A stretch of 25,717 bases of DNA from NCBI GenBank assembly GCA_002269645.1, contig NIVC01005117.1, forward strand, positions 1-25,717, written 5' to 3'. Position numbers and translations under genes: made by a program. How positions within the stretch are numbered: position 1 is the stretch's first letter; each line of letters opens with the position of its first letter. Below, piece after piece: positions 1,316-21,374 of the stretch. Under the pieces are notes generated by a model. The model was not told the origin of the DNA, made no database searches, and saw only the letters and a program-made list of their open reading frames with translations. The stretch is from Macrostomum lignano (taxonomy: Eukaryota).

Positions 1316-2170
1316 GTGTCTCTAGGAATCGATCATGTGTCTTTCTAGGAATCGATCATGTGTCTTTCTAGGAATCGATCATTTGTCTTTCTAGGAATCG
1401 ATCATGTGTCTTTCTAGAATCGATGCATGTATCTTTCTAGGAATCGATCATGTGTCTTTCTAGGAATCGATCATTTGTCTCTAGAATCGATCATGTGTCT
1501 TTCTAGGAATCGATCATGTGTCTTTCTAGAATCAATCATGTGTCTTTCTAGAGTCGATCATGGTGTCTTTCTAGGAGTCGATCATGTGTCGTTCTAGGAA
1601 TCGAGAATTAGTCTTTCTAGGAATCGAGAATGCGTCTTTCTAGGAATGAGAATTAGTCTTTCTAGGAATCGAGAATGCGTCTTTCTAGGAATCGATCATG
1701 TATCTTTCTAGAATCGATCATGTGTCTTTCTAGGAATCGATCATTTGTCTTTCTAGGAATCGATCATGTGTCTTTCTAGGAATCGATCATGTGTCTTTCT
1801 AGGAATCAATCATGTGTCTTTCTAGGAGTCGATCATGTGTCTTTCTAGGAGTCGATCATGTGTCGTTCTAGGAATCGAGAATTAGTCTTTCTAGGAATCG
1901 AGAATGCGTCTTTCTAGGAATCGAGAATGTGTCTTTCTAGGAATCGATCATGTGTCTTTCTAGGAATCGATGTGTCTTTCTCTGAATCGATTTATGTGTC
2001 TTTCTTGGATTCGATCATGTCTTTATAGAATCAAGAATGTGTCTTTCTGTTCAGCGAGAATGTCTTTCTAGAATCGATCATGTGTCTTTCTAGGTATCGA
2101 GAAAGTCTCCGTCTGGGAATAAAAAAGGTGTCTTTCTGGGAATCGAGAATGTGTCTTTCTGGAATTCGGT
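1316..2170. repeat. ~23-bp satellite (TCTTTCTAGGAATCGATCATGTG)n, ~35 copies, with higher-order variant blocks
   Basis: Clear tandem units. A variant series (AATCAATC, GAGTCGATC x2, GTTCTAGG..GAGAATTAG, GAGAATGCG) occurs twice, at ~1525-1680 and ~1800-1910. The array degenerates after ~1970. Confidence 0.95.
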
Positions 2171-3847: not shown

Positions 3848-4432
<585 letters not shown>

Positions 4433-5067: not shown

Positions 5068-6408
5068 ATGAATTCTGACGAGCCGGTAGTTCGTCTGGCG
5101 AAGGCGGAGTTTCTCAGGGCGCTGGACACATCGGCGCGGAATTACACAACCGGCAGAAACTTCGGCGTCGGCGGAGGCGGCGGCGGCGTCGGTGGTGTCC
5201 CCAATCGAACGCACGCAGCATTCTCGGTGCCGCCCCCGGCAGTTGCCATGGCGACAACAATCAACTCGCTGATCCCGGCTCCGCCAACTTCGCCTAGTAG
5301 CCGGCCGCCAACCCCGGTGCTGCTCTATTCGCTCGGGTTCGGCCTGGCCGGCCTGACGCTGGTTGCTCAGCTGGCGCTCGCCCTGCTGGCCATCGCGCGG
5401 GCCTGCGGGCGCCGGCGCCGACAGCACGCCGACTGCCTCTACGGCCTGTGCGCCCACGCCGCTATCATCGGCGCTGTCCAAGGCGGCTACGTGACGGTGA
5501 CGCACACTTTGCTGCTGGCCCGCGGTCCGGAGGGCCTGGCCGACCCGCTGTGGCGCGTCAACTGCAAGGCCTACCTGTTCTGCCGCTCCCTGCTCCCAGG
5601 GCTGTTCCTGCACCTGCTCGCCAGCGTCGGCGTGGCCTTCAAGACCATCCGGTACCCCGCCAGGCGCTGCTCCAGCAGCCTCTGCGGCAGGGCGGGCGGC
5701 CTGGCCGTGCACTGCCTGCCTTGGGCGATGTGCAGCGGCGCCCTGCTTCCGGCTTTAGTGCTGCACAAAGACGTCACCGAGGCCGCGATTCGAGCGGGTC
5801 GCTGCACCGTCCCGGAGCTCTGGCCTTGGCTGGCGCCACTGCTGGTGCTGTTCGGCCTACCGCAGGTGGCGCTGCTGCTGCTCACCTGTCTTCTCTGCGC
5901 TTTCCGGCCCTACGCCACCGGCGATGAAGACGAAGATGCCGACGACTCGCTGGAGGATGCGGCCAACAACGGCGAGGGCGAGCTACGGCCGCCGGGCTAC
6001 CTGCCGGCTGCCAACCACCTGAACCAGGGGCAGCCGCAGTCGCCGCAGTCGCGCACTCTGCTCCGCGGCCGCCCGATGCGCATCGCCCGCCTGCTGCTGA
6101 TTGTGCTCAACTGTCTTGAGGCGGCCACCCAGCTGCCTTACTCCATCATCAGTCTGCTGCAGACTGTGCTGCGAAACCGGCAGGCCAGGCATCTCATACC
6201 GGATGACACAGTTGACATTGCATTCTGGCTGCACATGGCCTTCTTCCCCGTGGCCAGCGTGTTCCTGGCGGCCCTGGTGGTCCAGCTGGACAAGGCCTAC
6301 CAGCTCACCGAGCGGGATCTGCACCAGAGAGGCGGTGCGAAACCGTCCAGAGGCGGAGGCGGGCCAGACGAAGTTCTGTACACGGCCAGCATGCTGTCTT
6401 CGGTGTGA
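5068..6408 (+). CDS. Orphan class A-like (rhodopsin-type) 7TM receptor, 446 aa, single exon, atypical motifs
   Basis: GC-rich 446-codon ORF with seven hydrophobic segments at GPCR spacing. It has an N-terminal sequon (N25-Y-T), a Cys at the start of TM3 (WRVNCKAY) plus an ECL2 Cys (GRCT), TM4 W...P (LPW..LLP), TM5 FGLP, TM6 QLPY and TM7 FP. The DRY and NPxxY motifs are not conserved. Confidence 0.8.
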   Translation: MNSDEPVVRLAKAEFLRALDTSARNYTTGRNFGVGGGGGGVGGVPNRTHAAFSVPPPAVAMATTINSLIPAPPTSPSSRPPTPVLLYSLGFGLAGLTLVAQLALALLAIARACGRRRRQHADCLYGLCAHAAIIGAVQGGYVTVTHTLLLARGPEGLADPLWRVNCKAYLFCRSLLPGLFLHLLASVGVAFKTIRYPARRCSSSLCGRAGGLAVHCLPWAMCSGALLPALVLHKDVTEAAIRAGRCTVPELWPWLAPLLVLFGLPQVALLLLTCLLCAFRPYATGDEDEDADDSLEDAANNGEGELRPPGYLPAANHLNQGQPQSPQSRTLLRGRPMRIARLLLIVLNCLEAATQLPYSIISLLQTVLRNRQARHLIPDDTVDIAFWLHMAFFPVASVFLAALVVQLDKAYQLTERDLHQRGGAKPSRGGGGPDEVLYTASMLSSV

Positions 6409-6441
6409 CCTCACTTTGAGATCCGCAAAACTGTTTCACGG

Positions 6442-6667
6442 CAGCCTGAGTGCTCAGTCGGTGTGACACACAGCAGCCTGAGTGCTCAGTCGGTGTGACA
6501 CACAGCAGCCTGAGTGCTCAGTCGGTGTGACACACAGCAGCCTGAGTGCTCAGTCGGTGTGACACACAGCAGCCTGAGTGCTCAGTCGGTGTGACACACA
6601 GCAGCCTGAGTGCTCAGTCGGTGTGACACACAGCAGCCTGAGTGCTCAGTCGGTGTGACACGCAGCA
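6442..6667. repeat. 32-bp minisatellite (CAGCCTGAGTGCTCAGTCGGTGTGACACACAG) x7 in the presumed GPCR 3' UTR
   Basis: Near-perfect units start at 6442, 6474, 6506, 6538, 6570, 6602 and 6634. Confidence 0.97.
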
Positions 6668-7475: not shown

Positions 7476-9450
<1,975 letters not shown>

Positions 9451-11199: not shown

Positions 11200-11532
11200 T
11201 GTAGCTGGCGCCCCTTCTGTAACTGGCGCCACCTCTGTAGCTGGCGTCCCTCTGTAGCTGGCGCCCCCTCTGTAGCTGGCGCCCCTTCTGTAGCTGGCGC
11301 CCCTTCTGTAGCTGGCGCCACCTCTGTAGCTGGCGTCCCTATTTACCTCGCGACCTTTCTGTAGCTGGCGCCCCTCTGTAGCTGGCGCCCCTTCTGTAGC
11401 TGGCGCCACCTCTGTAGCTGGCGTCCCTCTGTAGCTGGCGCCCCTTCTGTAGCTGGCGCCCCTTCTGTAGCTGGCGCCCCCTCTGTAGCTGGTGTCCCTC
11501 TTTACCTGGCGACCTTTCTGTAGCTGGCGCCC
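11200..11532. repeat. 18-bp minisatellite (CTGTAGCTGGCGCCCCCT)n with a twice-repeated TTTACCT.GCGACCTTT interruption
   Basis: Tandem units that translate as (APATEG)n on the minus strand. The same interruption at ~11340 and ~11500 indicates a block duplication. Confidence 0.95.
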
Positions 11533-12033
11533 CGCCTGAAGGTAGGCGGGTAAAAGGCGTAGCGTATTGTAGACCAGAACACAAAGGAAAATTACTCGAT
11601 CTGTCTATTGACTTGATTGCGCATAACTCAATTAGATGTATTTGCACAGAGTTTCTGTCACAAATTGCCTCTAGATGGTTGCTAGGTTACAAGGCATAAC
11701 AATAGGGCTCATGACTGCCTCTGTTGTACTACGTACACTGTGAGGCCTGCACAGCCCAACTGGTCGACTGTTTGACAGCCAATAACCCCAGAATCCAATT
11801 AGTCGGTGCCCAGTTATTGACTTATCCGCAGCTGCCATGCATGGCCCAAACATGGCCTAATTGGCTGAGCATCGCGGTGGATAGGGGGAGAGAAATGGGA
11901 GCAGAATGTAACGATACAGACTGCGATCCAGTATTTCAGTCACGAAAAAGACTGCGCATACTCCAAGATTGAATTCGAGAAAACTGATACCCAATACATA
12001 GGAAATTGAAAGTTATCGAAGCAGCGACAGGCA

Positions 12034-14158
12034 ATGAAACCACAGACACCACCAAATAGCGAAAATGAAGGAGACAATTTCTTTGGTTTTGAGCTGTCCA
12101 GCCGCCTGACTGAGTGCGTGCGGTGCGATGACGTGCAGCGGATGCTGGCGGTGCTGTCTGCAGCTGGCCTCGGACCCGAACACCTCAGCGGCCATCTAAG
12201 CACCGACGCTGAGATGCAGCGATCGACTGGCTGCTGGACGAGATCCTCATCGGGCCGCACTTCATCTGCTCAGCGCTGCAGCGTCAGCTTCAGCACAATC
12301 GTTCACCTCAGCGTGTTCAGGCAGAGCTCACGGGTGCTGAGCTTCATCTCTGCTGAACAGCCTCACCTGCTCATGATGCGAGACGATTCTGGCTCAGGTG
12401 TGCTGCACTGTCTGGCGGAGGCGAGCGTGCTGCTCCGGCGGAAGAGTGCTACCGGCGGAAACACTCGCCTCTCGAGCAGTTCGACGCGTTCCAGACTCGA
12501 CTGCTCTCCATGCTGAGCGACGTCGAGAGTCCGTACTCGGAGCAGCAGTGAGTCCGATATTGTGACTCATGTGTGAGTGAGCTCGAGCACTGTCTCGCAG
12601 CTAGTCATGCAGTCTCGCTCCGTTTCAGATCTGCATCGAGTCTGCTGCACTCGCTGTGTCTCATGGAGAACTCGGACGGACTGAGACCGCTGGAGTTATC
12701 TGTTCTCATCGGAGCATACTCCACATTTCAGTGCATCCTGCACGTAAAAGGCTACATTCTGAGTAAGCAGGTGAGTCACGGCATTCGAGTTCGCAACACG
12801 TTCGACCTGCGGGAGTACGATCTGATGAAGGGTGAGCGGAGGGACAAGAATCCCATGCTCATGCTCACTCTGATCTCGGCGTCGGAGGCGGATCCACTGT
12901 CGGAGTCGGGACTGCTCGAGTGTCCCGTCATCAAGAAGTGGATGAAAGCAATTTTCTTGACATGCGCGGCACTGTGATGCTGAAAAGCATGTTTCTACCA
13001 ACAATAGTGACCTATATGAGTCCTCTGACTCCGTTCATAGTTGCGGTGGCCAGCTTTGTCCAATTCGGTCACTACCTGCAGGTTGGATATCGGGAACACA
13101 TTGGCTACTTGAGGTCGCAACTGCCCAGAGGTGTCTTTGGTGCCTCGAATACCAGCGCTCAAGAGCTCGCGGTGGATTTTGTGCGGTCCAGTTGCTCCTC
13201 CCTGCAAATTCTGGCTTTCCTCTCCAACAGGTCCAATCCAGACAACAACGCCGTGATCTGTGTTTCCCCCGTTTTTTTCAACGATGTGAAGCGCTACGAG
13301 GTGTTTCGGCTACCTCTCCTGATTCCGTTGATAGTTTTGGGGTATCTGCTAGTTCAGGCTGTCATCATTGTGCACCGGACAAGGATAGTCCTCCGCAGTC
13401 CCCGATGGATGCCTCGCAGATCGAATTATCTCGTGCAGAGTCGTTTCTATGACAACGTGTTCATAATGAGCTTCATCAGTGGCCTGGTGTATGTCAGTAG
13501 CACTTTGGTTATGCTCTGGATGCTGGACTGTTCAGACTATGTGCTGGACCCTGCTACTGAAAACTACCGACTGCAAGTATTGTCAAGTGTCTCAGAGTGC
13601 TCCGCTGTTCTATTCATTTTCTTCAATCTGTTCAGCATCATTGAAGTGTACGAGATGATACTTAAACACGTGGCCTTCTTAGCCATCTGCTTTCGCTGGA
13701 TGTTGGCCAAGTTTTTAAACTCCATTCCACTGCTGTTTATCTGGGCCTACCTGGTGTTTGGCACCCTTCTGTACCTTGCCGACGTTAATGGTACCGATTT
13801 TCAATCGCATTTCGCAGTATTCTACTCACCGATGCTGTTGATTGTCAACCTGCTCCAGCTGTCGCCAAGGCTGTCTGTAATGATTTTGCACACTCTGTTC
13901 GCTCTCATCGTGACCATTAACATCCAGAACCTACTCATTGCCTACATTTTGCATGCGTTCAGTCACGTGGCAGTCAATTTCGAATTGATCTACCAGCTAT
14001 CCAGCCTTAACTGCTCCTTCAAGGCGTGGAAGTTCTATTGGTTTCTGACTCGAATGCTCCGCTACTGGGCAAAGGAGGAGCAGGAGCCAAGGTACGTCCT
14101 GACCGTTTGCAGCTTGCGGCCACCTCGCAGCCGATTTTTTGACACGAACCGAAGCTGA
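12034..14158 (+). pseudogene. TRPV-like channel copy 1 (ankyrin repeats + 6TM), disrupted by two 1-bp deletions; pseudogene or assembly error; 681 aa if repaired
   Basis: Exon 1 is 12034-12547, the intron is 12548-12628 (GTGAGT...TTTCAG) and exon 2 is 12629-14158. It lacks one G at ~12474 relative to copy 2 (CTCTCGAG vs CTCTCGGAG) and one T at ~12952-12955. Restoring both gives 2046 nt = 681 aa + stop, largely colinear with copy 2. S6 has QNLLIA, matching the TRP NLLIA motif. Confidence 0.7.
12548..12628 (+). other. 81-nt GT-AG intron of TRPV-like copy 1
   Basis: CA|GTGAGT donor and CTCGCTCCGTTTCAG| acceptor. It matches the copy 2 intron at 79 of 81 positions. Confidence 0.8.
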
Positions 14159-14362
14159 AGCGGAATAATTTTGGAAATCAGCCCAGTCTTAAACTGCATG
14201 CATCGGTCATTTTTACAGCTAACAGATGAAAATGCGATGAAAAACATATGCGGCATCTTCAGTCTTTAACCTTTTATTCTGAATTATAGTATGAATACTT
14301 ACACTAAAGTCAGTTAGCCGATGAAGAGGACTCCAACTACTATAGCTATGTAAGTGGTATAA

Positions 14363-14368
14363 AATAAA
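14363..14368 (+). promoter_or_regulatory. Candidate polyadenylation signal (AATAAA) for TRPV-like copy 1
   Basis: AATAAA about 200 nt after the stop codon, but in AT-rich sequence where it could occur by chance. Confidence 0.3.
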
Positions 14369-15283
14369 AAAAATAAGGGCGTAATGTTTGCTAAGAGTAA
14401 TAACTTGGAAAATACACAAATATTTCTGGCAACTTGGCCCGATTGGTTTTGGATAACACGCGACTAACGAGAGAGACAAAAAACTCATAACGTTTCCGCT
14501 TCGAGTATAAAACGATTAAATCTACATGTATATTTATTTAAATCACTAGTAAATTTCTTCTCTTCCGTGAATCTTAAAACCTTAGAACCTTAGAAAATTT
14601 ATGGCTTATTTTCATCTCCATGCACGCTACCTTATGTTACTTAGAGTTTTTTGCACTTATTAGTATTATTATTAATATAATATTTTTGATATATTTTTCA
14701 TAGGCACAGTGAAGTGTACATGCCTAACGATAAATAAATTAGCGCCGCTGTGCACTCCTGTGTGAGTGTGTGCCTGTGCGTATGACTGCGTACGTATCCG
14801 CGCGCTTGTATGCCTGCTCAGGGGAGTCGGCGGAATGGGCAGCAATGCCTCTCGCCGGTTGTGTGACAATGTCGCTTACTGCCTCTAATAAAAACGGTAA
14901 ATGCCCGTTCGATGCAATGTATCCTACAAAAATAGAAAAATTTGTTTAAAGAACACTAAGACTTACTTATGCTGCTTCTGCTTTGTAATAAGCAAAATGA
15001 GGCCTTCAAACGATTTTCAATAATCTGGCATCCCCTGCTACAACCAATGGTCCATAGAACCAGCCAAAAAGTCGATAAGACTAGTTAAGGTTGTAAAAAG
15101 AATGCTTAAATTTACTACTCAAATTATTGATAACACACTGAGCAAGCAGTGTGTTATCAATAATTCTCAGAAATGTAATTAAGTCGATAACGCTTCCTGG
15201 ATGGCTGTGCCAACTCTGTGTGAATCGACGAGTAGAGAGCGACTCAACAAACATTTGCACTTCGGAAGCAAGAGGCAATCATT

Positions 15284-15289
15284 TATAAA
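15284..15289 (+). promoter_or_regulatory. Candidate TATA box for TRPV-like copy 2
   Basis: TATAAA about 65 nt upstream of the ATG at 15353 (GACCATG context). Position-based only. Confidence 0.3.
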
Positions 15290-15352
15290 GAGAGGTGGGC
15301 GGTAGCTGAAATGTAGTCAAGGGATACTCTTGAGTGCTCAGTATCCAAGACC

Positions 15353-15846
15353 ATGCCTCAAGAAGATTCAGGATTTGTCTTCGACCCTGAGCTGTCTAAT
15401 CGCCTGACGGAGTGCCTGCGGTGCGATGACGTGCAGCGGATGCTGGCGGTGCTGTCTGCAGCTGGCCTCGGACCCGAACACCTCAGCGGCCATCTAAGCA
15501 CCGACGCTGAGATGCAGCGATCGACTGGCTGCTGGACGAGATCCTCATCGGGCCGCACTTCATCTGCTCAGCGCTGCAGCGTCAGCTTCAGCACAATCGT
15601 TCACCTCAGCGTGCTCAGGCAGAGCTCACGGGTGCTGAGCTTCATCTCTGCTGAACAGCCTCACCTGCTCATGATGCGAGACGATTCTGGCTCAGGTGTT
15701 CTGCACTGTCTGGCGGAGGCGAGCGTGCTGCTCCGGCGGAAGAGTGCTACCGGCGGAAACACTCGCCTCTCGGAGCAGTTCGACGCGTTCCAGACTCGAC
15801 TGCTCTCCATGCTAAGCGACGTCGAGAGTCCGTACTCGGAGCAGCA
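15353..15846 (+). CDS. TRPV-like channel copy 2, exon 1 (N-terminus with ankyrin-like repeats)
   Basis: STIVHLSVLRQSSRVLSFISAEQPHLLMMRDDSGSGVLHCLAE fits the ankyrin pattern and resembles TRPV5/6 QDSLGNTVLHIL. The exon ends at a CA|GTGAGT donor (phase 2). Confidence 0.75.
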
Positions 15847-15927
15847 GTGAGTCCGATATTGTGTCTCATGTGTGAGTGAGCTCGAGCACTGTCTCGCAGC
15901 TGGTCATGCAGTCTCGCTCCGTTTCAG
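15847..15927 (+). other. 81-nt GT-AG intron of TRPV-like copy 2, containing the in-frame TGA that splits the two ORFs
   Basis: Consensus donor GTGAGT and a pyrimidine-rich TTTCAG acceptor. The length is a multiple of 3, and splicing yields ...PYSEQQ|SASSLLHSLCLMENSDGLRPL... in frame. Confidence 0.8.
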
Positions 15928-17440
15928 ATCTGCATCGAGTCTGCTGCACTCGCTGTGTCTCATGGAGAACTCGGACGGACTGAGACCGCTGGAGTTATCT
16001 GTTCTCATCGGAGCATACTCCACATTTCAGTGCATCCTGCACGTAAAAGGCTACATTCTGAGTAAGCAGGTGAGTCACGGCATTCGAGTTCGCAACACGT
16101 TTGACCTGCGGGAGTACGATCTGATGAAGGGTGAGCGGAGGGACAAGAATCCCATGCTCATGCTCACTCTGATCTCGGCGTCGGAGGCGGATCCACTGTC
16201 GGAGTCGGGACTGCTCGAGTGTCCTGTTATCAAGAAGTGGATGAAAGCAGTTGTTAGCGAGATGTCCTGCGCCATGTACATGCACAGAGCAGCCATTGTC
16301 ATATTCACTTTGATCTTCTCTCCCATTACATTTTCGTTCGGGACCATATCCGCGATGCTGTGCGGCGGCTACCAGCTTCAGTTGGGGTTCTCCGAGTTCA
16401 CCCAATATATGCGGTCGCTGATTAATGGCTCGCTGTCCAACGGGTCCTCAACCGAGGAATTCATTCGGCATGGCTGCCAGCCAGAAAACCTATTCCGCTT
16501 CCTGATCACGGATCTAAATCCCGCGAACAGCCGTGTGCTGCTCCGGTCTCCAGTTTTCTTTACGCGGGTCACCCGGTCCAACATCATTGCAAATCTCATC
16601 AGCGTCCTGATCCTCTTAGCAATATTTCAGGCCTTTAGACTGGTCACCATTGTTTACAACGTTGTCAAAGATCGACAGTTCTATTCATCCCGATGGATGC
16701 CTGCCTCCAAGTCCGATTTTGTAGTTCAGTCGCACTTCTATGACGCAGTGTACGCGCTGTGCTTTGCAACGGGTCTGATCTATATAGTCTTGGCCAGCTT
16801 GTTGAGCAGATTCCTAGACTGCTCAGCTCTTGTCCTGGGCATTTCCAGCGGCACTTTCTGGCTGTCGGTGCTAACGCAATCCGCTGAGTGCTCGGCTGTT
16901 TTGTACTTCTTCTTCAACATGTTCGGCCTATTTGAGGCCTACGAAATGGCAGTGAAGCAGGCGGCTTTTCTCAGCATCTGCTTCCGGAAGATGTTGGTGA
17001 ACTTCCTGCTGGTACTGCCGCTGCTGCTAGTCTGGGCCTACCTGGTGTTCGGCACCCTGCTCTACATGACAGACTTTCGAGGCCAGGAGTTTAGCTCGCA
17101 TCGTCACGTGCTGTACTCCCCGCTGCGGCTGATTATTAACACGGCCAACCTGCCGCACCGGCTGTCTACCAGCCTTCTGCACACGCTGTTCGTTATCAGC
17201 GTGAGCATCAGCGTGCAGAACTTCATCATTGGCTATATTGTGAGCGCGTTCAAAGAGGTTTCGTCAAAATTTGACATTGTATACCATTTGAGCGGCTTGG
17301 ATGCTGCCTTGCGCACCTGGCGTCTCTACCCGGGTCTGCTCAGGGTGGTGCATCTGTGCAGGAGTAGCCGGAGTCCATTCTGTAAGAGACCGAGCAGCAC
17401 TGCAATCCGGGTGTGGAGTCTTCGACCAACGGCCGGATAA
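15928..17440 (+). CDS. TRPV-like channel copy 2, exon 2 (last ankyrin repeat, linker, S1-S6); spliced protein 668 aa
   Basis: NSDGLRPLELSVLIGAYSTFQCIL...HGIRVRNTFDLREYD...LLECPVIKKW parallels recalled TRPV6 [23 protein letters not shown]...YGPLTSTLYDLTEID...ILDQTPVKELVSLKW. Six hydrophobic segments plus a re-entrant pore segment follow, with S4-S5 linker ICFRKML and S6 QNFIIG. Confidence 0.8.
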
Positions 17441-17700: not shown

Positions 17701-17706
17701 AATAAA
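17701..17706 (+). promoter_or_regulatory. Candidate polyadenylation signal (AATAAA) for TRPV-like copy 2
   Basis: AATAAA about 260 nt after the stop codon, with a second one near 17750. Confidence 0.3.
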
Positions 17707-19944: not shown

Positions 19945-20810
19945 GGGGAGAATCAGGTGAGGGCGGGTGGGGAATCACGTGAGAAGGGGTGGGGAATCAG
20001 GCGAGAGCGGGTGGGGAATCACGTGAGAAGGGGTGGGAATTGTAGATTTGTTTTAGGGGTAAGAAAAGGCTTGGCCACTGCGCGGCCTTGAGCGCCAATA
20101 TATATATTTAGAAATCGATATTTGCGTGGGGTGGAGTTGCGCCTGATAAACAAGAAGCGTGCAAGCTAATTGGCTGCAGAGCGACCGGGGCAGGCATTGT
20201 ACACTTGAGGGTCAGAGAGTTAAACGGTGTACGGCCAACAGGAATCAGGTGAGGGCGGGTGGGGAATCACGTGAGAAGGGGTGGGGAATCACGTGAGAAG
20301 GGGTGGGGAATCAGGTGAGGGGGGGTGGGGAATTGTGTGAATTGCAGGAGGATAATCAGGGGGAATTGCGGGAGGGGAATCAGGGATATTTGCTGGAGAG
20401 GAATCAGGGTATTGCTGGAGAGGAATTAGGGGTATTGCTGGAGGGGAATCAGGGTATAGCTGGAGGGGAATCAGGGGTATTGCTGGAGGGGGATCTGGTG
20501 AATTGCGAGAGGGGGATCTGGTGAATTGCGAGAGGGAAAGCGGGTGAATTGCGGAAGGGGAATCAGGGGAATTGCGGGAGGATAATTAGGGGTATTGCGG
20601 GAAGATAATCAGCAGGGGAAGTGCGGGAGGTGAATCAGGGGAATTGCGGGACGTAAATCAGGTGAATTGCAGGAGGGGAATCAGGGGAATTGCGGGAGGT
20701 GAATCAAGCTAATTGCGGGAGGTGAATCAGGTGAATTGCGGGCGGTGAATCAGGGGAATTGCGAGGGGGGATCACGTGAATTGCGGGAGAGGAATTGGGT
20801 GAATTCTTCT
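19945..20810. repeat. Purine/G-rich degenerate repeats in Post2 intron 1 (GGGGAATC.. and GGGAATTGCGGGA.. units)
   Basis: Repeated GGGTGGGGAATCA and GAATTGCG units. A 48-bp block at 19951-19998 is copied exactly at 20243-20290, with unique sequence between ~20040 and 20240. Confidence 0.85.
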
Positions 20811-21211
20811 TAATAAAAAACAGACGGACGAGTTGGCCTCTTTCCTCTAGGATAGGGTCTACAAACAGAAATTTTTGCAAAAAAGATTGCGCTAAAAGCC
20901 ACACTTCCCCTTAGACAGTTTAGGATCAATTAGTAAAATGCGCAGATTAACCATAAATTTTCTTTGATAATCATCAGACTCCGCGCAAACGCCAGTAGCA
21001 ACTGTCAACAGGCCAGCAGGCTATTTTTTGTCTCTTGGCTTTTAAAAGGTGAGGCGCTCTCAGCAACAGGGCAGATGATCGGTCAAATTTGGGTGGCTGC
21101 CTGGAAGCTGCTAATGGATTTTTCGGTTTTTAAGTGCCGCAAAGAGAGCATGCATGGGTGACCCCATTGACCCCCCTCCGTGGACCCCGAAGCCCCGTGG
21201 GATGCACGTAC

Positions 21212-21340
21212 CGCCGGCTGCGGAGTCTGGATCAGCGAACTCGTCCAGCCGGGGCAGCATCATCTCGTGCGGAGCAAACAGGTACGAGCCACCGCCGACG
21301 CCACCGCCAGCGCCGCCGACTCCGACGACACCTCCGCGAA

Positions 21341-21374
<34 letters not shown>

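What the first reader, a model, noticed from the sequence alone, without database searches (positions are those of the whole stretch)
12034..17440. Tandem pair of compact, highly divergent TRPV-like channels: candidate lineage-specific heteromeric sensor
Two head-to-tail genes (681 and 668 aa) have TRPV-type ankyrin/linker motifs and six TMs. They have only a short ankyrin region (about 2-3 recognisable repeats versus 6 in TRPV1-6), a very short C-terminus and one small intron. Invertebrate TRPVs work as obligate heteromers (Nanchung/Inactive, OSM-9/OCR-2). An adjacent pair with identical cytoplasmic domains but different membrane domains could be co-regulated subunits of an undescribed channel. 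They do not look like orthologues of those known subunits by eye.
Basis: partly seen in the sequence, partly recalled or inferred. Interest (0 to 1): 0.7.

Follow-up and report, generated by a model that had tools for sequence, protein, structure and literature searches.

The report
Tandem divergent TRPV-like channel genes
Two neighbouring genes in what is probably a free-living flatworm genome encode very divergent relatives of the TRPV sensory ion channels; they share an almost identical front half through gene conversion, one copy has a broken reading frame in this assembly, and nothing here shows that they work as a pair.

Summary
The two head-to-tail genes are real. Gene 2 (15353-17440, one 81-nt GT-AG intron) is an intact 668-aa ORF. 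About 830 bp covering the whole cytoplasmic N-terminal domain is ~99% identical between the copies. The membrane domains are only 39% identical in protein.

Pfam and direct PDB sequence searches find nothing. An exhaustive HMMER search links both genes to an uncharacterised family of ~600-aa proteins. Its named members come from Macrostomum, a nemertean and annelids, and the family matches TRPV1-6 strongly. AlphaFold models of both proteins hit only TRPV structures.

They are compact TRPV-related subunits with about 4 ankyrin-like repeats, a long S1-S2 loop, no TRP-box Trp and a short non-acidic pore loop. They are not visibly orthologues of Nan/Iav.

The identical N-termini are best explained by gene conversion under purifying selection (5 synonymous to 1 non-synonymous difference). 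The heteromer and co-regulation idea is untested and unsupported. Interest is moderate to low.

The parts
12034..12547 (+). Gene 1, exon 1 (N-terminal cytoplasmic domain). Frame break at 12474: a single G where gene 2 has GG. The initiating frame ends at TGA 12514-12516.
12548..12628 (+). Gene 1 intron, 81 nt, GT..AG, 79/81 identical to the gene 2 intron.
12629..14158 (+). Gene 1, exon 2: last ankyrin-like repeat, beta-hairpin and linker, pre-S1, S1-S6, TRP helix, C-terminal beta-strand and stop. Second frame break at the T-run 12952-12955: 17 nt where codon alignment with gene 2 expects 18. The membrane part is the open 412-codon frame 12920-14158.
12119..12950 (+). Gene-conversion tract, copy in gene 1 (about 99% identical to 15417-16249). 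It spans residues ~29-279 of gene 1 (~22-272 of gene 2) and the intron, and ends abruptly at the start of S1.
14159..15352 (.). Intergenic spacer, about 1.2 kb and about 40% GC, unrelated to the 5' flank of gene 1. AATAAA at 14363-14368, 205 nt after the gene 1 stop.
15353..15846 (+). Gene 2, exon 1.
15847..15927 (+). Gene 2 intron, 81 nt, GTGAGT..TTTCAG. It contains an in-frame stop if retained.
15928..17440 (+). Gene 2, exon 2. The spliced product is an intact 668 aa: S1 ~278-305, S1-S2 loop ~306-385 with two NGS sequons, S2 ~389-410, S3 ~434-462, S4 ~470-500, S5 ~508-545, pore helix ~556-569, S6 ~575-610, TRP helix 613-631, C-terminal beta-strand 657-663.
15417..16249 (+). Gene-conversion tract, copy in gene 2.
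17701..17706 (+). AATAAA 261 nt after the gene 2 stop. Candidate poly(A) signal; weak evidence.

Best explanation
These are two tandemly duplicated genes for very divergent TRPV-related six-transmembrane channel subunits. The host is a spiralian animal, most probably a macrostomid flatworm or a relative.

Predicted anatomy of each product:
- about four ankyrin-like helix pairs;
- a beta-hairpin and helical linker, then a pre-S1 helix;
- S1-S6 with a re-entrant pore helix and a TRP-like helix;
- a C-terminal beta-strand predicted to complete the TRPV-type three-stranded sheet.

By analogy with every solved TRPV, the subunits should assemble as tetramers around a central pore, with S6 (N-x-[L/I]-I-[A/G]) forming the gate.

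The duplication is old, since the membrane domains are only 39% identical. The 5' part of about 830 bp, which is the whole cytoplasmic N-terminal domain plus the intron, has been homogenised by gene conversion. The tract stops where homology collapses, at the start of S1.

Since that conversion both copies of the N-terminal domain have stayed under purifying selection. Gene 1's two single-base frame breaks are therefore either assembly errors or very recent lesions. Both sit at short homopolymers, inside or at the edge of the duplicated tract of what looks like a long-read assembly.

Shown: the gene structures, the conversion tract, membership of the ~600-aa family, and the TRPV fold. Inferred: tetrameric cation-channel function, plasma-membrane topology with a glycosylated S1-S2 loop, and a sensory role. 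Ligand, stimulus and ion selectivity are unknown. The pore loop is shortened and lacks the acidic filter residue.
For: Homology:
- Exhaustive HMMER against 1.84 billion proteins gives 108 hits at E<=1e-3. The best is a Macrostomum lignano fragment (E 6e-20, 39% id). Several hits align over residues ~150-640.
- The M. lignano cluster member P0109 aligns to residues 1-365 at 30% id.
- Family member P0003 matches TRPV5/6 at E~1e-12 over nearly its full length.
- Profile A2 matches TRPV6 at 4e-30, and all 60 listed matches are TRPV1-6.
- A family HMM built without the window genes scores gene 2 at 172 bits and gene 1 at 165 bits. The membrane-only parts score 38 and 50 bits.

Structure:
- AlphaFold2 models reach pLDDT 67.4 / pTM 0.67 for gene 2 and 80.8 / 0.80 for gene 1.
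- In Foldseek against the PDB, the top 50 hits for each model are all full-length TRPV chains (TRPV1, 3, 5 and 6 for gene 2, plus TRPV2 for gene 1). Probability is 1.00, E goes down to 7e-10, and TM-scores are about 0.5.
- The beta-hairpin and the C-terminal strand are both predicted.

Gene conversion:
- Identity is 98-100% from 12119 to 12950, against 33-70% downstream and 27-37% upstream.

Selection:
- The exonic tract has 5 synonymous and 1 non-synonymous difference, pN/pS 0.065, binomial P=0.004. The intron has 2/81 differences, close to pS.
- The membrane frame of gene 1 is open for 412 codons.
Against: - The window proteins alone match no Pfam family at E<=1.
- They match no TRP chain in the PDB at E<=10, either singly or as a two-sequence profile. 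The TRPV assignment therefore rests on intermediate sequences and on models built from an alignment with those intermediates.
- Several highly conserved TRP fingerprint positions are changed. The S4-S5 glycine (rTRPV1 G563) is Ala in both genes. The TRP-box Trp is Tyr. Gene 2 has NFIIG in S6.
- The position aligned with the TRPV6 filter Asp is Asn in gene 2 and Gln in gene 1. The pore loop is 5 residues shorter than the family profile. Conduction is therefore not assured.
- Gene 1 cannot be translated end to end as assembled.
- There are no expression data.
- The source organism is inferred only from the best database hit.
Confidence: 0.75

Rival explanations
1. One reading: the two genes are co-regulated, obligate partner subunits of one heteromeric sensory channel, like Nanchung/Inactive or OSM-9/OCR-2. 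The identical cytoplasmic domains would serve assembly, and the different membrane domains would give an asymmetric pore.
For: - The genes are in tandem, in the same orientation, 1.2 kb apart.
- Both membrane domains keep the family-invariant residues.
- The shared N-terminal domain is under purifying selection in both copies.
- Established knowledge: TRPV ankyrin domains contact the neighbouring subunit's beta-sheet, and invertebrate TRPVs do form heteromers. A Nan/Iav complex is in the PDB as 9nvn.
Against: - There is no test of expression or assembly.
- The 5' flanks and first ~19 codons are unrelated or diverged, and each gene has its own downstream AATAAA. Nothing indicates shared regulation.
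- Gene conversion explains the identity without any functional demand.
- Gene 1 has two frame breaks in this assembly.
- Tandem paralogues are common and usually not obligate partners.
Confidence: 0.12
2. Gene 1 is a recently inactivated pseudogene, and only gene 2 encodes a working channel subunit.
For: - Two independent 1-nt frame disruptions lead to stops at 12514-12516 and 12975-12977.
- No splice variant can bypass both.
- The second break lies exactly at the 3' end of the conversion tract, where a faulty repair junction could arise.
Against: - The 412-codon membrane frame has no stop. About 19 stops would be expected in random sequence.
- The N-terminal tract shows 5 synonymous to 1 non-synonymous change. 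If gene 1 had drifted neutrally since the conversion, about 5-8 non-synonymous changes would be expected, so Poisson P is <0.05 (plus inference).
- Both breaks are single-base length differences in short homopolymers, inside or at the edge of a ~99% identical duplicate.
- The assembly spans a 2-kb near-perfect microsatellite (98% matches) and is therefore probably long-read based. That is the typical setting for uncorrected indel errors.
Confidence: 0.35
3. The shared 5' half arose from a recent partial duplication or illegitimate recombination. This would have grafted gene 2's 5' part onto an unrelated older paralogue, making a chimeric gene, rather than from homology-driven gene conversion.
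For: - The 3' boundary is abrupt at about 12951-12955 and coincides with a frame break.
- Downstream nucleotide identity falls at once to 33-40%.
Against: - The 5' edge decays gradually. Identity is 72% for the alignment block starting at 12075, with 5 differences between 12099 and 12118, and the peptide motifs there are still alignable (FELSSRLTECV versus PELSNRLTECL). This is as expected if the older paralogous sequence was already homologous.
- Codon alignment across the 3' boundary is collinear, AIFLDM versus AVVSEM.
- The intron position is shared.
Confidence: 0.12
4. The proteins keep the TRPV fold but are not plasma-membrane cation channels of their own. They could be non-conducting modulatory subunits or organellar channels with unusual selectivity.
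For: - There is no acidic residue at the filter-equivalent position (N or Q).
- Basic residues (R, H, R) lie in the shortened pore loop of gene 2.
- The S4-S5 Gly is replaced by Ala, and the TRP-box Trp is missing.
Against: - The S6 gate motif, the pore-helix Y-S motif and Asn569 are retained.
- N-glycosylation sequons and a conserved Cys lie in the S1-S2 loop, which fits a secretory-pathway or surface protein.
- About half of the wider family also has N at the filter position.
Confidence: 0.1

Closest known systems
Vertebrate TRPV5/TRPV6 and the other solved TRPVs (TRPV1-4)
   Same: - The whole-chain fold matches: ankyrin-like repeats, beta-hairpin and linker, pre-S1, S1-S6, pore helix, TRP helix and C-terminal beta-strand. 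These are the best and only top structural hits for both models.
- They are also the best profile hits, with TRPV6 at 4e-30.
- The S6 N-x-L-I-A motif is shared.
   Different: - There is no direct sequence match, and structural alignments show only 12-14% identity.
- There are about 4 rather than 6 ankyrin repeats.
- The S1-S2 loop is about 80 aa and carries glycosylation sequons.
- The TRP-box Trp is Tyr and the S4-S5 Gly is Ala.
- The filter Asp is replaced by Asn or Gln in a shorter loop.
- There is no long C-terminal tail or calmodulin site.
Uncharacterised ~600-aa TRPV-related family. Examples: Macrostomum lignano A0A1I8G3Y0/A0A1I8H5B5, Lineus longissimus XP_064621355.1, Dimorphilus gyrociliatus CAD5125478.1, Paralvinella palmiformis KAK2162920.1, plus many unnamed proteins, mostly from metagenome or short-contig records.
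   Same: - Architecture and length are the same.
- Shared motifs are EN..GLRPLE, the Y-D-x-T-E-Y beta-hairpin, RRDKSP, K-x-W before S1, a long S1-S2 loop with N-x-S/T and Cys, YS..LN in the pore helix, LH...NFLIA in S6, and no TRP-box Trp.
- The family HMM scores 165-172 bits.
   Different: - The window genes are outliers, at 15-25% identity to most members and 30-39% to the Macrostomum fragments.
- The S4-S5 region is degenerate: the family motif LP..G.FV..QRM becomes VKQAAFLSICFRKM.
- The pore loop is 5 aa shorter and lacks the acidic residues that follow the filter in the family.
Nanchung/Inactive (Drosophila) and OSM-9/OCR-2 (C. elegans) heteromeric TRPVs
   Same: They belong to the TRPV superfamily, and there is precedent for two different TRPV subunits forming one sensory channel.
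   Different: - There is no detectable direct similarity to Nan or Iav at E<=10.
- Family member P0003 scores lower against them (3e-9 and 3e-8) than against TRPV5/6 (7e-13).
- Those subunits are much larger (882-984 residues in the PDB chains).
- Nothing here shows co-assembly.
TRPVL (vanilloid-like), the proposed sister family of TRPV in cnidarians and annelids (PMC9242649, PMC7306681)
   Same: - It is a TRPV-related family present in annelids.
- It lacks the TRP-box Trp.
- Its function is uncharacterised.
   Different: - The published TRPVL fingerprint is W at rTRPV1 position 666, F at 678 and A at 697. The family here has Y/F at 666, L at 678 (88/94) and I/L/M at 697.
- The Dimorphilus member of this family is CAD5125478.1, not the TRPVL reference CAD5123450.1.
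- No reference sequences were available for a tree.

Membership tests
TRPV (vanilloid TRP channels) | Six-TM channel core with a re-entrant pore helix and the S6 N-x-L-I-A motif | tested here: met
   - Hydropathy shows six segments.
- Gene 1 has NLLIA and gene 2 has NFIIG, with the Asn invariant across the family alignment.
- Membrane-only parts match the family HMM at 38-50 bits.
TRPV (vanilloid TRP channels) | Whole-subunit fold, including the linker beta-hairpin plus C-terminal beta-strand sheet | tested here: met
   - AF2 models show strands 209-215/218-224 plus 657-663 in gene 2, and 216-222/225-231 plus 662-668 in gene 1.
- The Foldseek top 50 are all TRPV1/2/3/5/6.
- Caveat: the models depend on the family alignment.
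TRPV (vanilloid TRP channels) | N-terminal ankyrin repeat domain of six repeats | tested here: not met
   - No Pfam Ank hit at E<=1.
- The models show about four helix-pair repeats before the beta-hairpin.
- In the family profile (A2), position 87 aligns with TRPV6 residue 165, about the fourth repeat, so the region before it is roughly two repeats shorter.
TRPV (vanilloid TRP channels) | TRP box with conserved Trp (IWKLQ; rTRPV1 W697) | tested here: not met
   Tyr lies 21 residues after the S6 Asn in both genes (VYHLS and IYQLS). None of the six commonest residues at this position in the 94 family members is Trp; I, L and M are commonest.
TRPV (vanilloid TRP channels) | Significant direct sequence similarity to curated TRPV, Ion_trans or Ank models | tested here: not met
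   - Pfam gives nothing at E<=1.
- PDB phmmer and the two-sequence profile give nothing at E<=10.
- Similarity is only transitive: window to P0003 at 1.3e-12, then P0003 to TRPV5/6 at ~1e-12, and through the family profile.
TRPV (vanilloid TRP channels) | Phylogenetic placement inside TRPV (clades A, B, C/D of PMC9664204) | not testable with these tools
   No reference invertebrate TRPV sequences could be fetched. Only score ranking is available, with TRPV5/6 above Iav and Nan.
TRPVL (vanilloid-like) | Published fingerprint residues: W666, F678, A697 (rTRPV1 numbering) | tested here: not met
   The family has Y/F at 666, L at 678 and I/L/M at 697. The window genes have F/L at 666, I/L at 678 and Y at 697. 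The published fingerprint comes from only six sequences.
TRPVL (vanilloid-like) | Clustering with Nematostella, Capitella or Dimorphilus TRPVL references | not testable with these tools
   The accessions are known, but sequences are not retrievable here. The Dimorphilus family member found is a different protein.
Obligate heteromeric TRPV pair (Nan/Iav type) | Both subunit genes intact | tested here: inconclusive
   Gene 2 is intact. Gene 1 has two 1-nt frame breaks that may be assembly errors.
Obligate heteromeric TRPV pair (Nan/Iav type) | Co-expression in the same cells, physical co-assembly and interdependence | not testable with these tools
   No expression data and no multimer prediction are available.
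Obligate heteromeric TRPV pair (Nan/Iav type) | Orthology to Nan, Iav, OSM-9 or OCR-2 | tested here: not met
   No hit to Nan or Iav chains at E<=10. The closest relatives are the uncharacterised ~600-aa family. No tree was built.

The most novel reading that the evidence does not exclude
The pair belongs to an undescribed TRP subfamily that is sister to TRPV but is neither canonical TRPV nor TRPVL.

Features of this subfamily would be:
- its named members come from Spiralia;
- a compact size of about 600 aa;
- mostly invisible to Pfam;
- a long glycosylated S1-S2 loop;
- no TRP-box Trp.

In this flatworm lineage, two ancient paralogues with different, non-acidic pores would be kept with an identical assembly domain by repeated, selected gene conversion, because they co-assemble into one heteromeric sensor.
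Probability: 0.1. Interest if true: 0.6.

Novelty: new variant of a known kind. Interest (0 to 1): 0.33.

Why it matters
- Parasitic flatworms lack TRPV channels, while free-living ones have them (PMC5196486). Divergent TRPV-related genes in a free-living flatworm add to that contrast.
- The work exposes a sizeable family of compact TRPV-fold proteins that curated domain models miss. The family is unnamed and unstudied, and the relatives that carry names come from spiralian animals.
- The domain-limited gene conversion is a clean example of mosaic concerted evolution in a channel gene. The cytoplasmic half is homogenised and the membrane half is free to diverge.
- None of this changes current understanding of TRP channels unless function or heteromerisation is demonstrated.

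Tried and rejected
- The word-indexed homologue search found nothing with gene 2 or with alignment A2, although members of A2 are in that collection. Only the exhaustive HMMER search worked.
The source genome could not be identified, and no transcript evidence on the frame breaks was obtained.
- Look-ups of family members gave assemblies GCA_022702875.1 and GCA_022702835.1 and an ENA metagenome, none with organism names. A paper search for those accessions found nothing.
- I tested whether the family is TRPVL through the Dimorphilus reference accession. It is a different protein, so the test is inconclusive.
- The abalone paper has no held supplement for its 'unclassified TRPV-like' sequences.
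- I considered a gene 1 splice variant that bypasses the frame breaks and rejected it. The first frame stops before the donor, and the second break would need an intron within about 20 nt.
- I considered a third copy or fragments elsewhere in the window. tblastn and self-blastn show only the two genes and the one duplicated tract.
- I considered wrong-frame artefacts in the low-complexity stretch at residues 52-76. It is the only frame open throughout, and it is simply predicted to be disordered.

Full report
**What is in the sequence**

The interval holds two + strand genes in tandem.

Gene 2 runs 15353-15846 and 15928-17440. The 81-nt intron starts GTGAGT, ends TTTCAG, and begins with an in-frame TGA if retained. 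Splicing gives an intact 668-aa product.

Gene 1 runs 12034-14158 and has the same intron at 12548-12628. Its reading frame is broken twice:
- Gene 2 reads CTCTCGGAG where gene 1 reads CTCTCGAG, with a single G at 12474. The initiating frame then ends at 12514-12516, before the splice donor.
- At the T-run 12952-12955, gene 1 has 17 nt where codon alignment with gene 2 expects 18 (AIFLDM versus AVVSEM). The middle frame stops at 12975-12977, and the membrane domain continues in a third frame, the 412-codon ORF 12920-14158.

The breaks were not noticed.

**The mosaic similarity**

The DNA alignment shows a sharp mosaic.
- From 12119 to 12950 (15417-16249 in gene 2) the copies are 98-100% identical, with 9 substitutions and 1 indel. 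This stretch includes the intron.
- Upstream, identity decays over about 45 nt and then disappears. The first ~19 codons and the 5' flanks are unrelated.
- Downstream, identity drops at once to 33-40% and recovers to 50-70% only over S3-S6.

In protein terms, residues ~22-272 differ at one position (L88F). This is the entire cytoplasmic N-terminal region up to the K-K-W motif before S1. The membrane halves are 39% identical.

This is the signature of an old duplication with later gene conversion of the 5' half.

Within the exonic tract there are 5 synonymous and 1 non-synonymous differences. That gives pS 0.027, pN 0.0018, a ratio of 0.065 and a binomial P of 0.004. The intron differs at 2 of 81 positions, close to pS. 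The N-terminal domain has therefore stayed under purifying selection in both copies since the conversion.

**What the proteins are**

Direct searches are blind.
- Pfam gives nothing at E<=1 for either protein.
- phmmer against all PDB chains gives only a marginal ANKRD27 match (E 0.13).
- A two-sequence profile does no better.
- The word-indexed homologue search returned nothing.

The exhaustive HMMER search of 1.84 billion representatives found 108 proteins at E<=1e-3.
- The best hit is a Macrostomum lignano fragment (E 6e-20, 39% id). A longer member of its cluster aligns to residues 1-365 at 30% identity.
- Most hits are about 600 aa. Some carry Ank or Ion_trans Pfam hits.
- Several hits align with gene 2 from about residue 150 to about 640.
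- Named members come from Lineus longissimus (a nemertean), and from Dimorphilus gyrociliatus and Paralvinella palmiformis (annelids). The rest are unnamed, mostly metagenome or short-contig records.

This family is clearly TRPV-related.
- Member P0003 matches TRPV5/6 at about 1e-12 over nearly its full length, Inactive at 3e-9 and Nanchung at 3e-8.
- A 12-sequence profile that includes the window genes matches TRPV6 at 4e-30, and its 60 listed hits are all TRPV1-6.
- A family HMM built from 96 members without the window genes scores gene 2 at 172 bits and gene 1 at 165 bits. Their membrane-only parts score 38 and 50 bits.

**Structure**

AlphaFold2 models were made for gene 2 (12-sequence alignment, pLDDT 67.4, pTM 0.67) and for conceptual gene 1 (57-sequence alignment, pLDDT 80.8, pTM 0.80).

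Both models show:
- four ankyrin-like helix pairs;
- a beta-hairpin, linker helices and a pre-S1 helix;
- six long TM helices with a pore helix, and a TRP helix;
- a C-terminal beta-strand.

In Foldseek against the PDB, the top 50 hits for each model are exclusively full-length TRPV chains (TRPV1, 3, 5 and 6 for gene 2, plus TRPV2 for gene 1). Probability is 1.00, E goes down to 7e-10, and TM-scores are about 0.5.

**How they differ from canonical TRPVs**

The ankyrin region is about two repeats short. In the family profile, position 87 aligns with TRPV6 residue 165, near the fourth repeat. The C-terminus ends a few residues after the beta-strand.

The S1-S2 loop is about 80 aa and poorly predicted. 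It carries N-x-S/T sequons, a conserved Cys and an SPVFF motif.

I compared the proteins with the published TRP fingerprint (PMC9242649):
- the pre-S1 Trp and the S6 Asn and Ile are kept;
- the S4-S5 Gly is Ala in both genes;
- gene 2 has NFIIG in S6;
- the TRP-box Trp is Tyr, and in the 94 family members examined it is usually I, L or M, with Trp not among the six commonest residues.

The residue aligned with the Ca2+-selecting Asp of TRPV6 is Asn in gene 2 and Gln in gene 1. The loop after it is 5 residues shorter than in the family and lacks the acidic residues found there. Ion selectivity cannot be predicted, and even conduction is not assured.

Compactness, the long S1-S2 loop and the missing TRP-box Trp are traits of the whole family. 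The degenerate S4-S5 linker and the short pore loop are specific to the window genes.

**Which named family**

The published TRPVL fingerprint is W666, F678 and A697. It does not fit this family, which has Y/F, L and I/L/M at those positions. The Dimorphilus member is also not the TRPVL reference accession.

No reference sequences were available for a tree. Placement as TRPV proper, TRPVL or a third TRPV-related clade stays open. Unclassified TRPV-like channels near TRPV and TRPVL have been reported in abalone (PMC12980990).

Free-living flatworms, including M. lignano, are known to have TRPV homologues, whereas parasitic flatworms lack them (PMC5196486).

**Is gene 1 alive?**

Arguments for an assembly error or a very recent lesion:
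- Both breaks are one-base length differences in short homopolymers.
- Both lie inside or at the edge of the ~99% identical duplicate, where short-read polishing is least reliable.
- The assembly spans a 2-kb near-perfect (TATC)n array (98% matches), so it is probably long-read based.
- The membrane frame is open for 412 codons.
- The 5:1 ratio of synonymous to non-synonymous changes argues against neutral drift of gene 1 since the conversion.

Arguments for a real pseudogene:
- There are two independent breaks.
- One sits exactly at the tract boundary.

I put a true pseudogene at roughly one in three. Reads or cDNA would settle it.

**The heteromer idea**

Nothing here tests the heteromer idea. 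Tandem position and a shared N-terminal domain are compatible with it. Gene conversion explains the identity on its own. The promoters and 5' ends are unrelated, and each gene has its own downstream AATAAA. One partner may also be broken. The idea remains a speculation with low prior.

**Verdict**

This is a real pair of highly derived TRPV-related channel genes with domain-limited concerted evolution. They belong to an unstudied family whose named members come from spiralian animals.

I rate it a new variant of a known kind, of moderate to low interest.

Noticed in passing
window 5068-6408 (+): A GC-rich (65-69%) single-exon ORF of 446 aa with about seven hydrophobic segments. It has only a weak rhodopsin-family match (7tm_1, E 0.039, below the cut-off) and no PDB sequence match at E<=1. 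It looks like an orphan GPCR-like gene about 5.6 kb upstream of gene 1.
   Followed up: partly
window 7476-9450, 3848-4432, 25060-25506: Very long, almost perfect tetranucleotide microsatellites: (TATC) x494, (AGAC) x146 and (ATAG) x112. Arrays of this length imply a long-read assembly, which bears on whether the single-base frame breaks in gene 1 can be trusted.
   Followed up: partly
window 11200-11533: An 18-bp minisatellite (TGTAGCTGGCGCCCCTTC, about 19 copies) lies 500 bp upstream of the gene 1 start codon. It gives spurious ORFs on both strands.
   Followed up: no
window 21111-22073 (-): A 320-aa ORF rich in poly-Q, poly-G and poly-A runs. It has only low-complexity Pfam matches and may be an exon of a glutamine-rich nuclear protein.
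   Followed up: no
window 1321-2165, 6437-6667, 20339-20795, 22060-22834, 23474-24499: Many further minisatellites with periods of 16-57 bp, for example a 16-bp unit x64 at 23474-24499. Tandem repeats make up a large share of the window.
   Followed up: no
L001 10001-11998; L002 3001-4875; L005 1407-3227: Members of the ~600-aa TRPV-related family are encoded as single uninterrupted ORFs, on a 1.5-Mb ENA metagenome contig and in assemblies GCA_022702875.1 and GCA_022702835.1. Some have no Pfam hit on record, so the family is largely invisible to standard annotation.
   Followed up: partly
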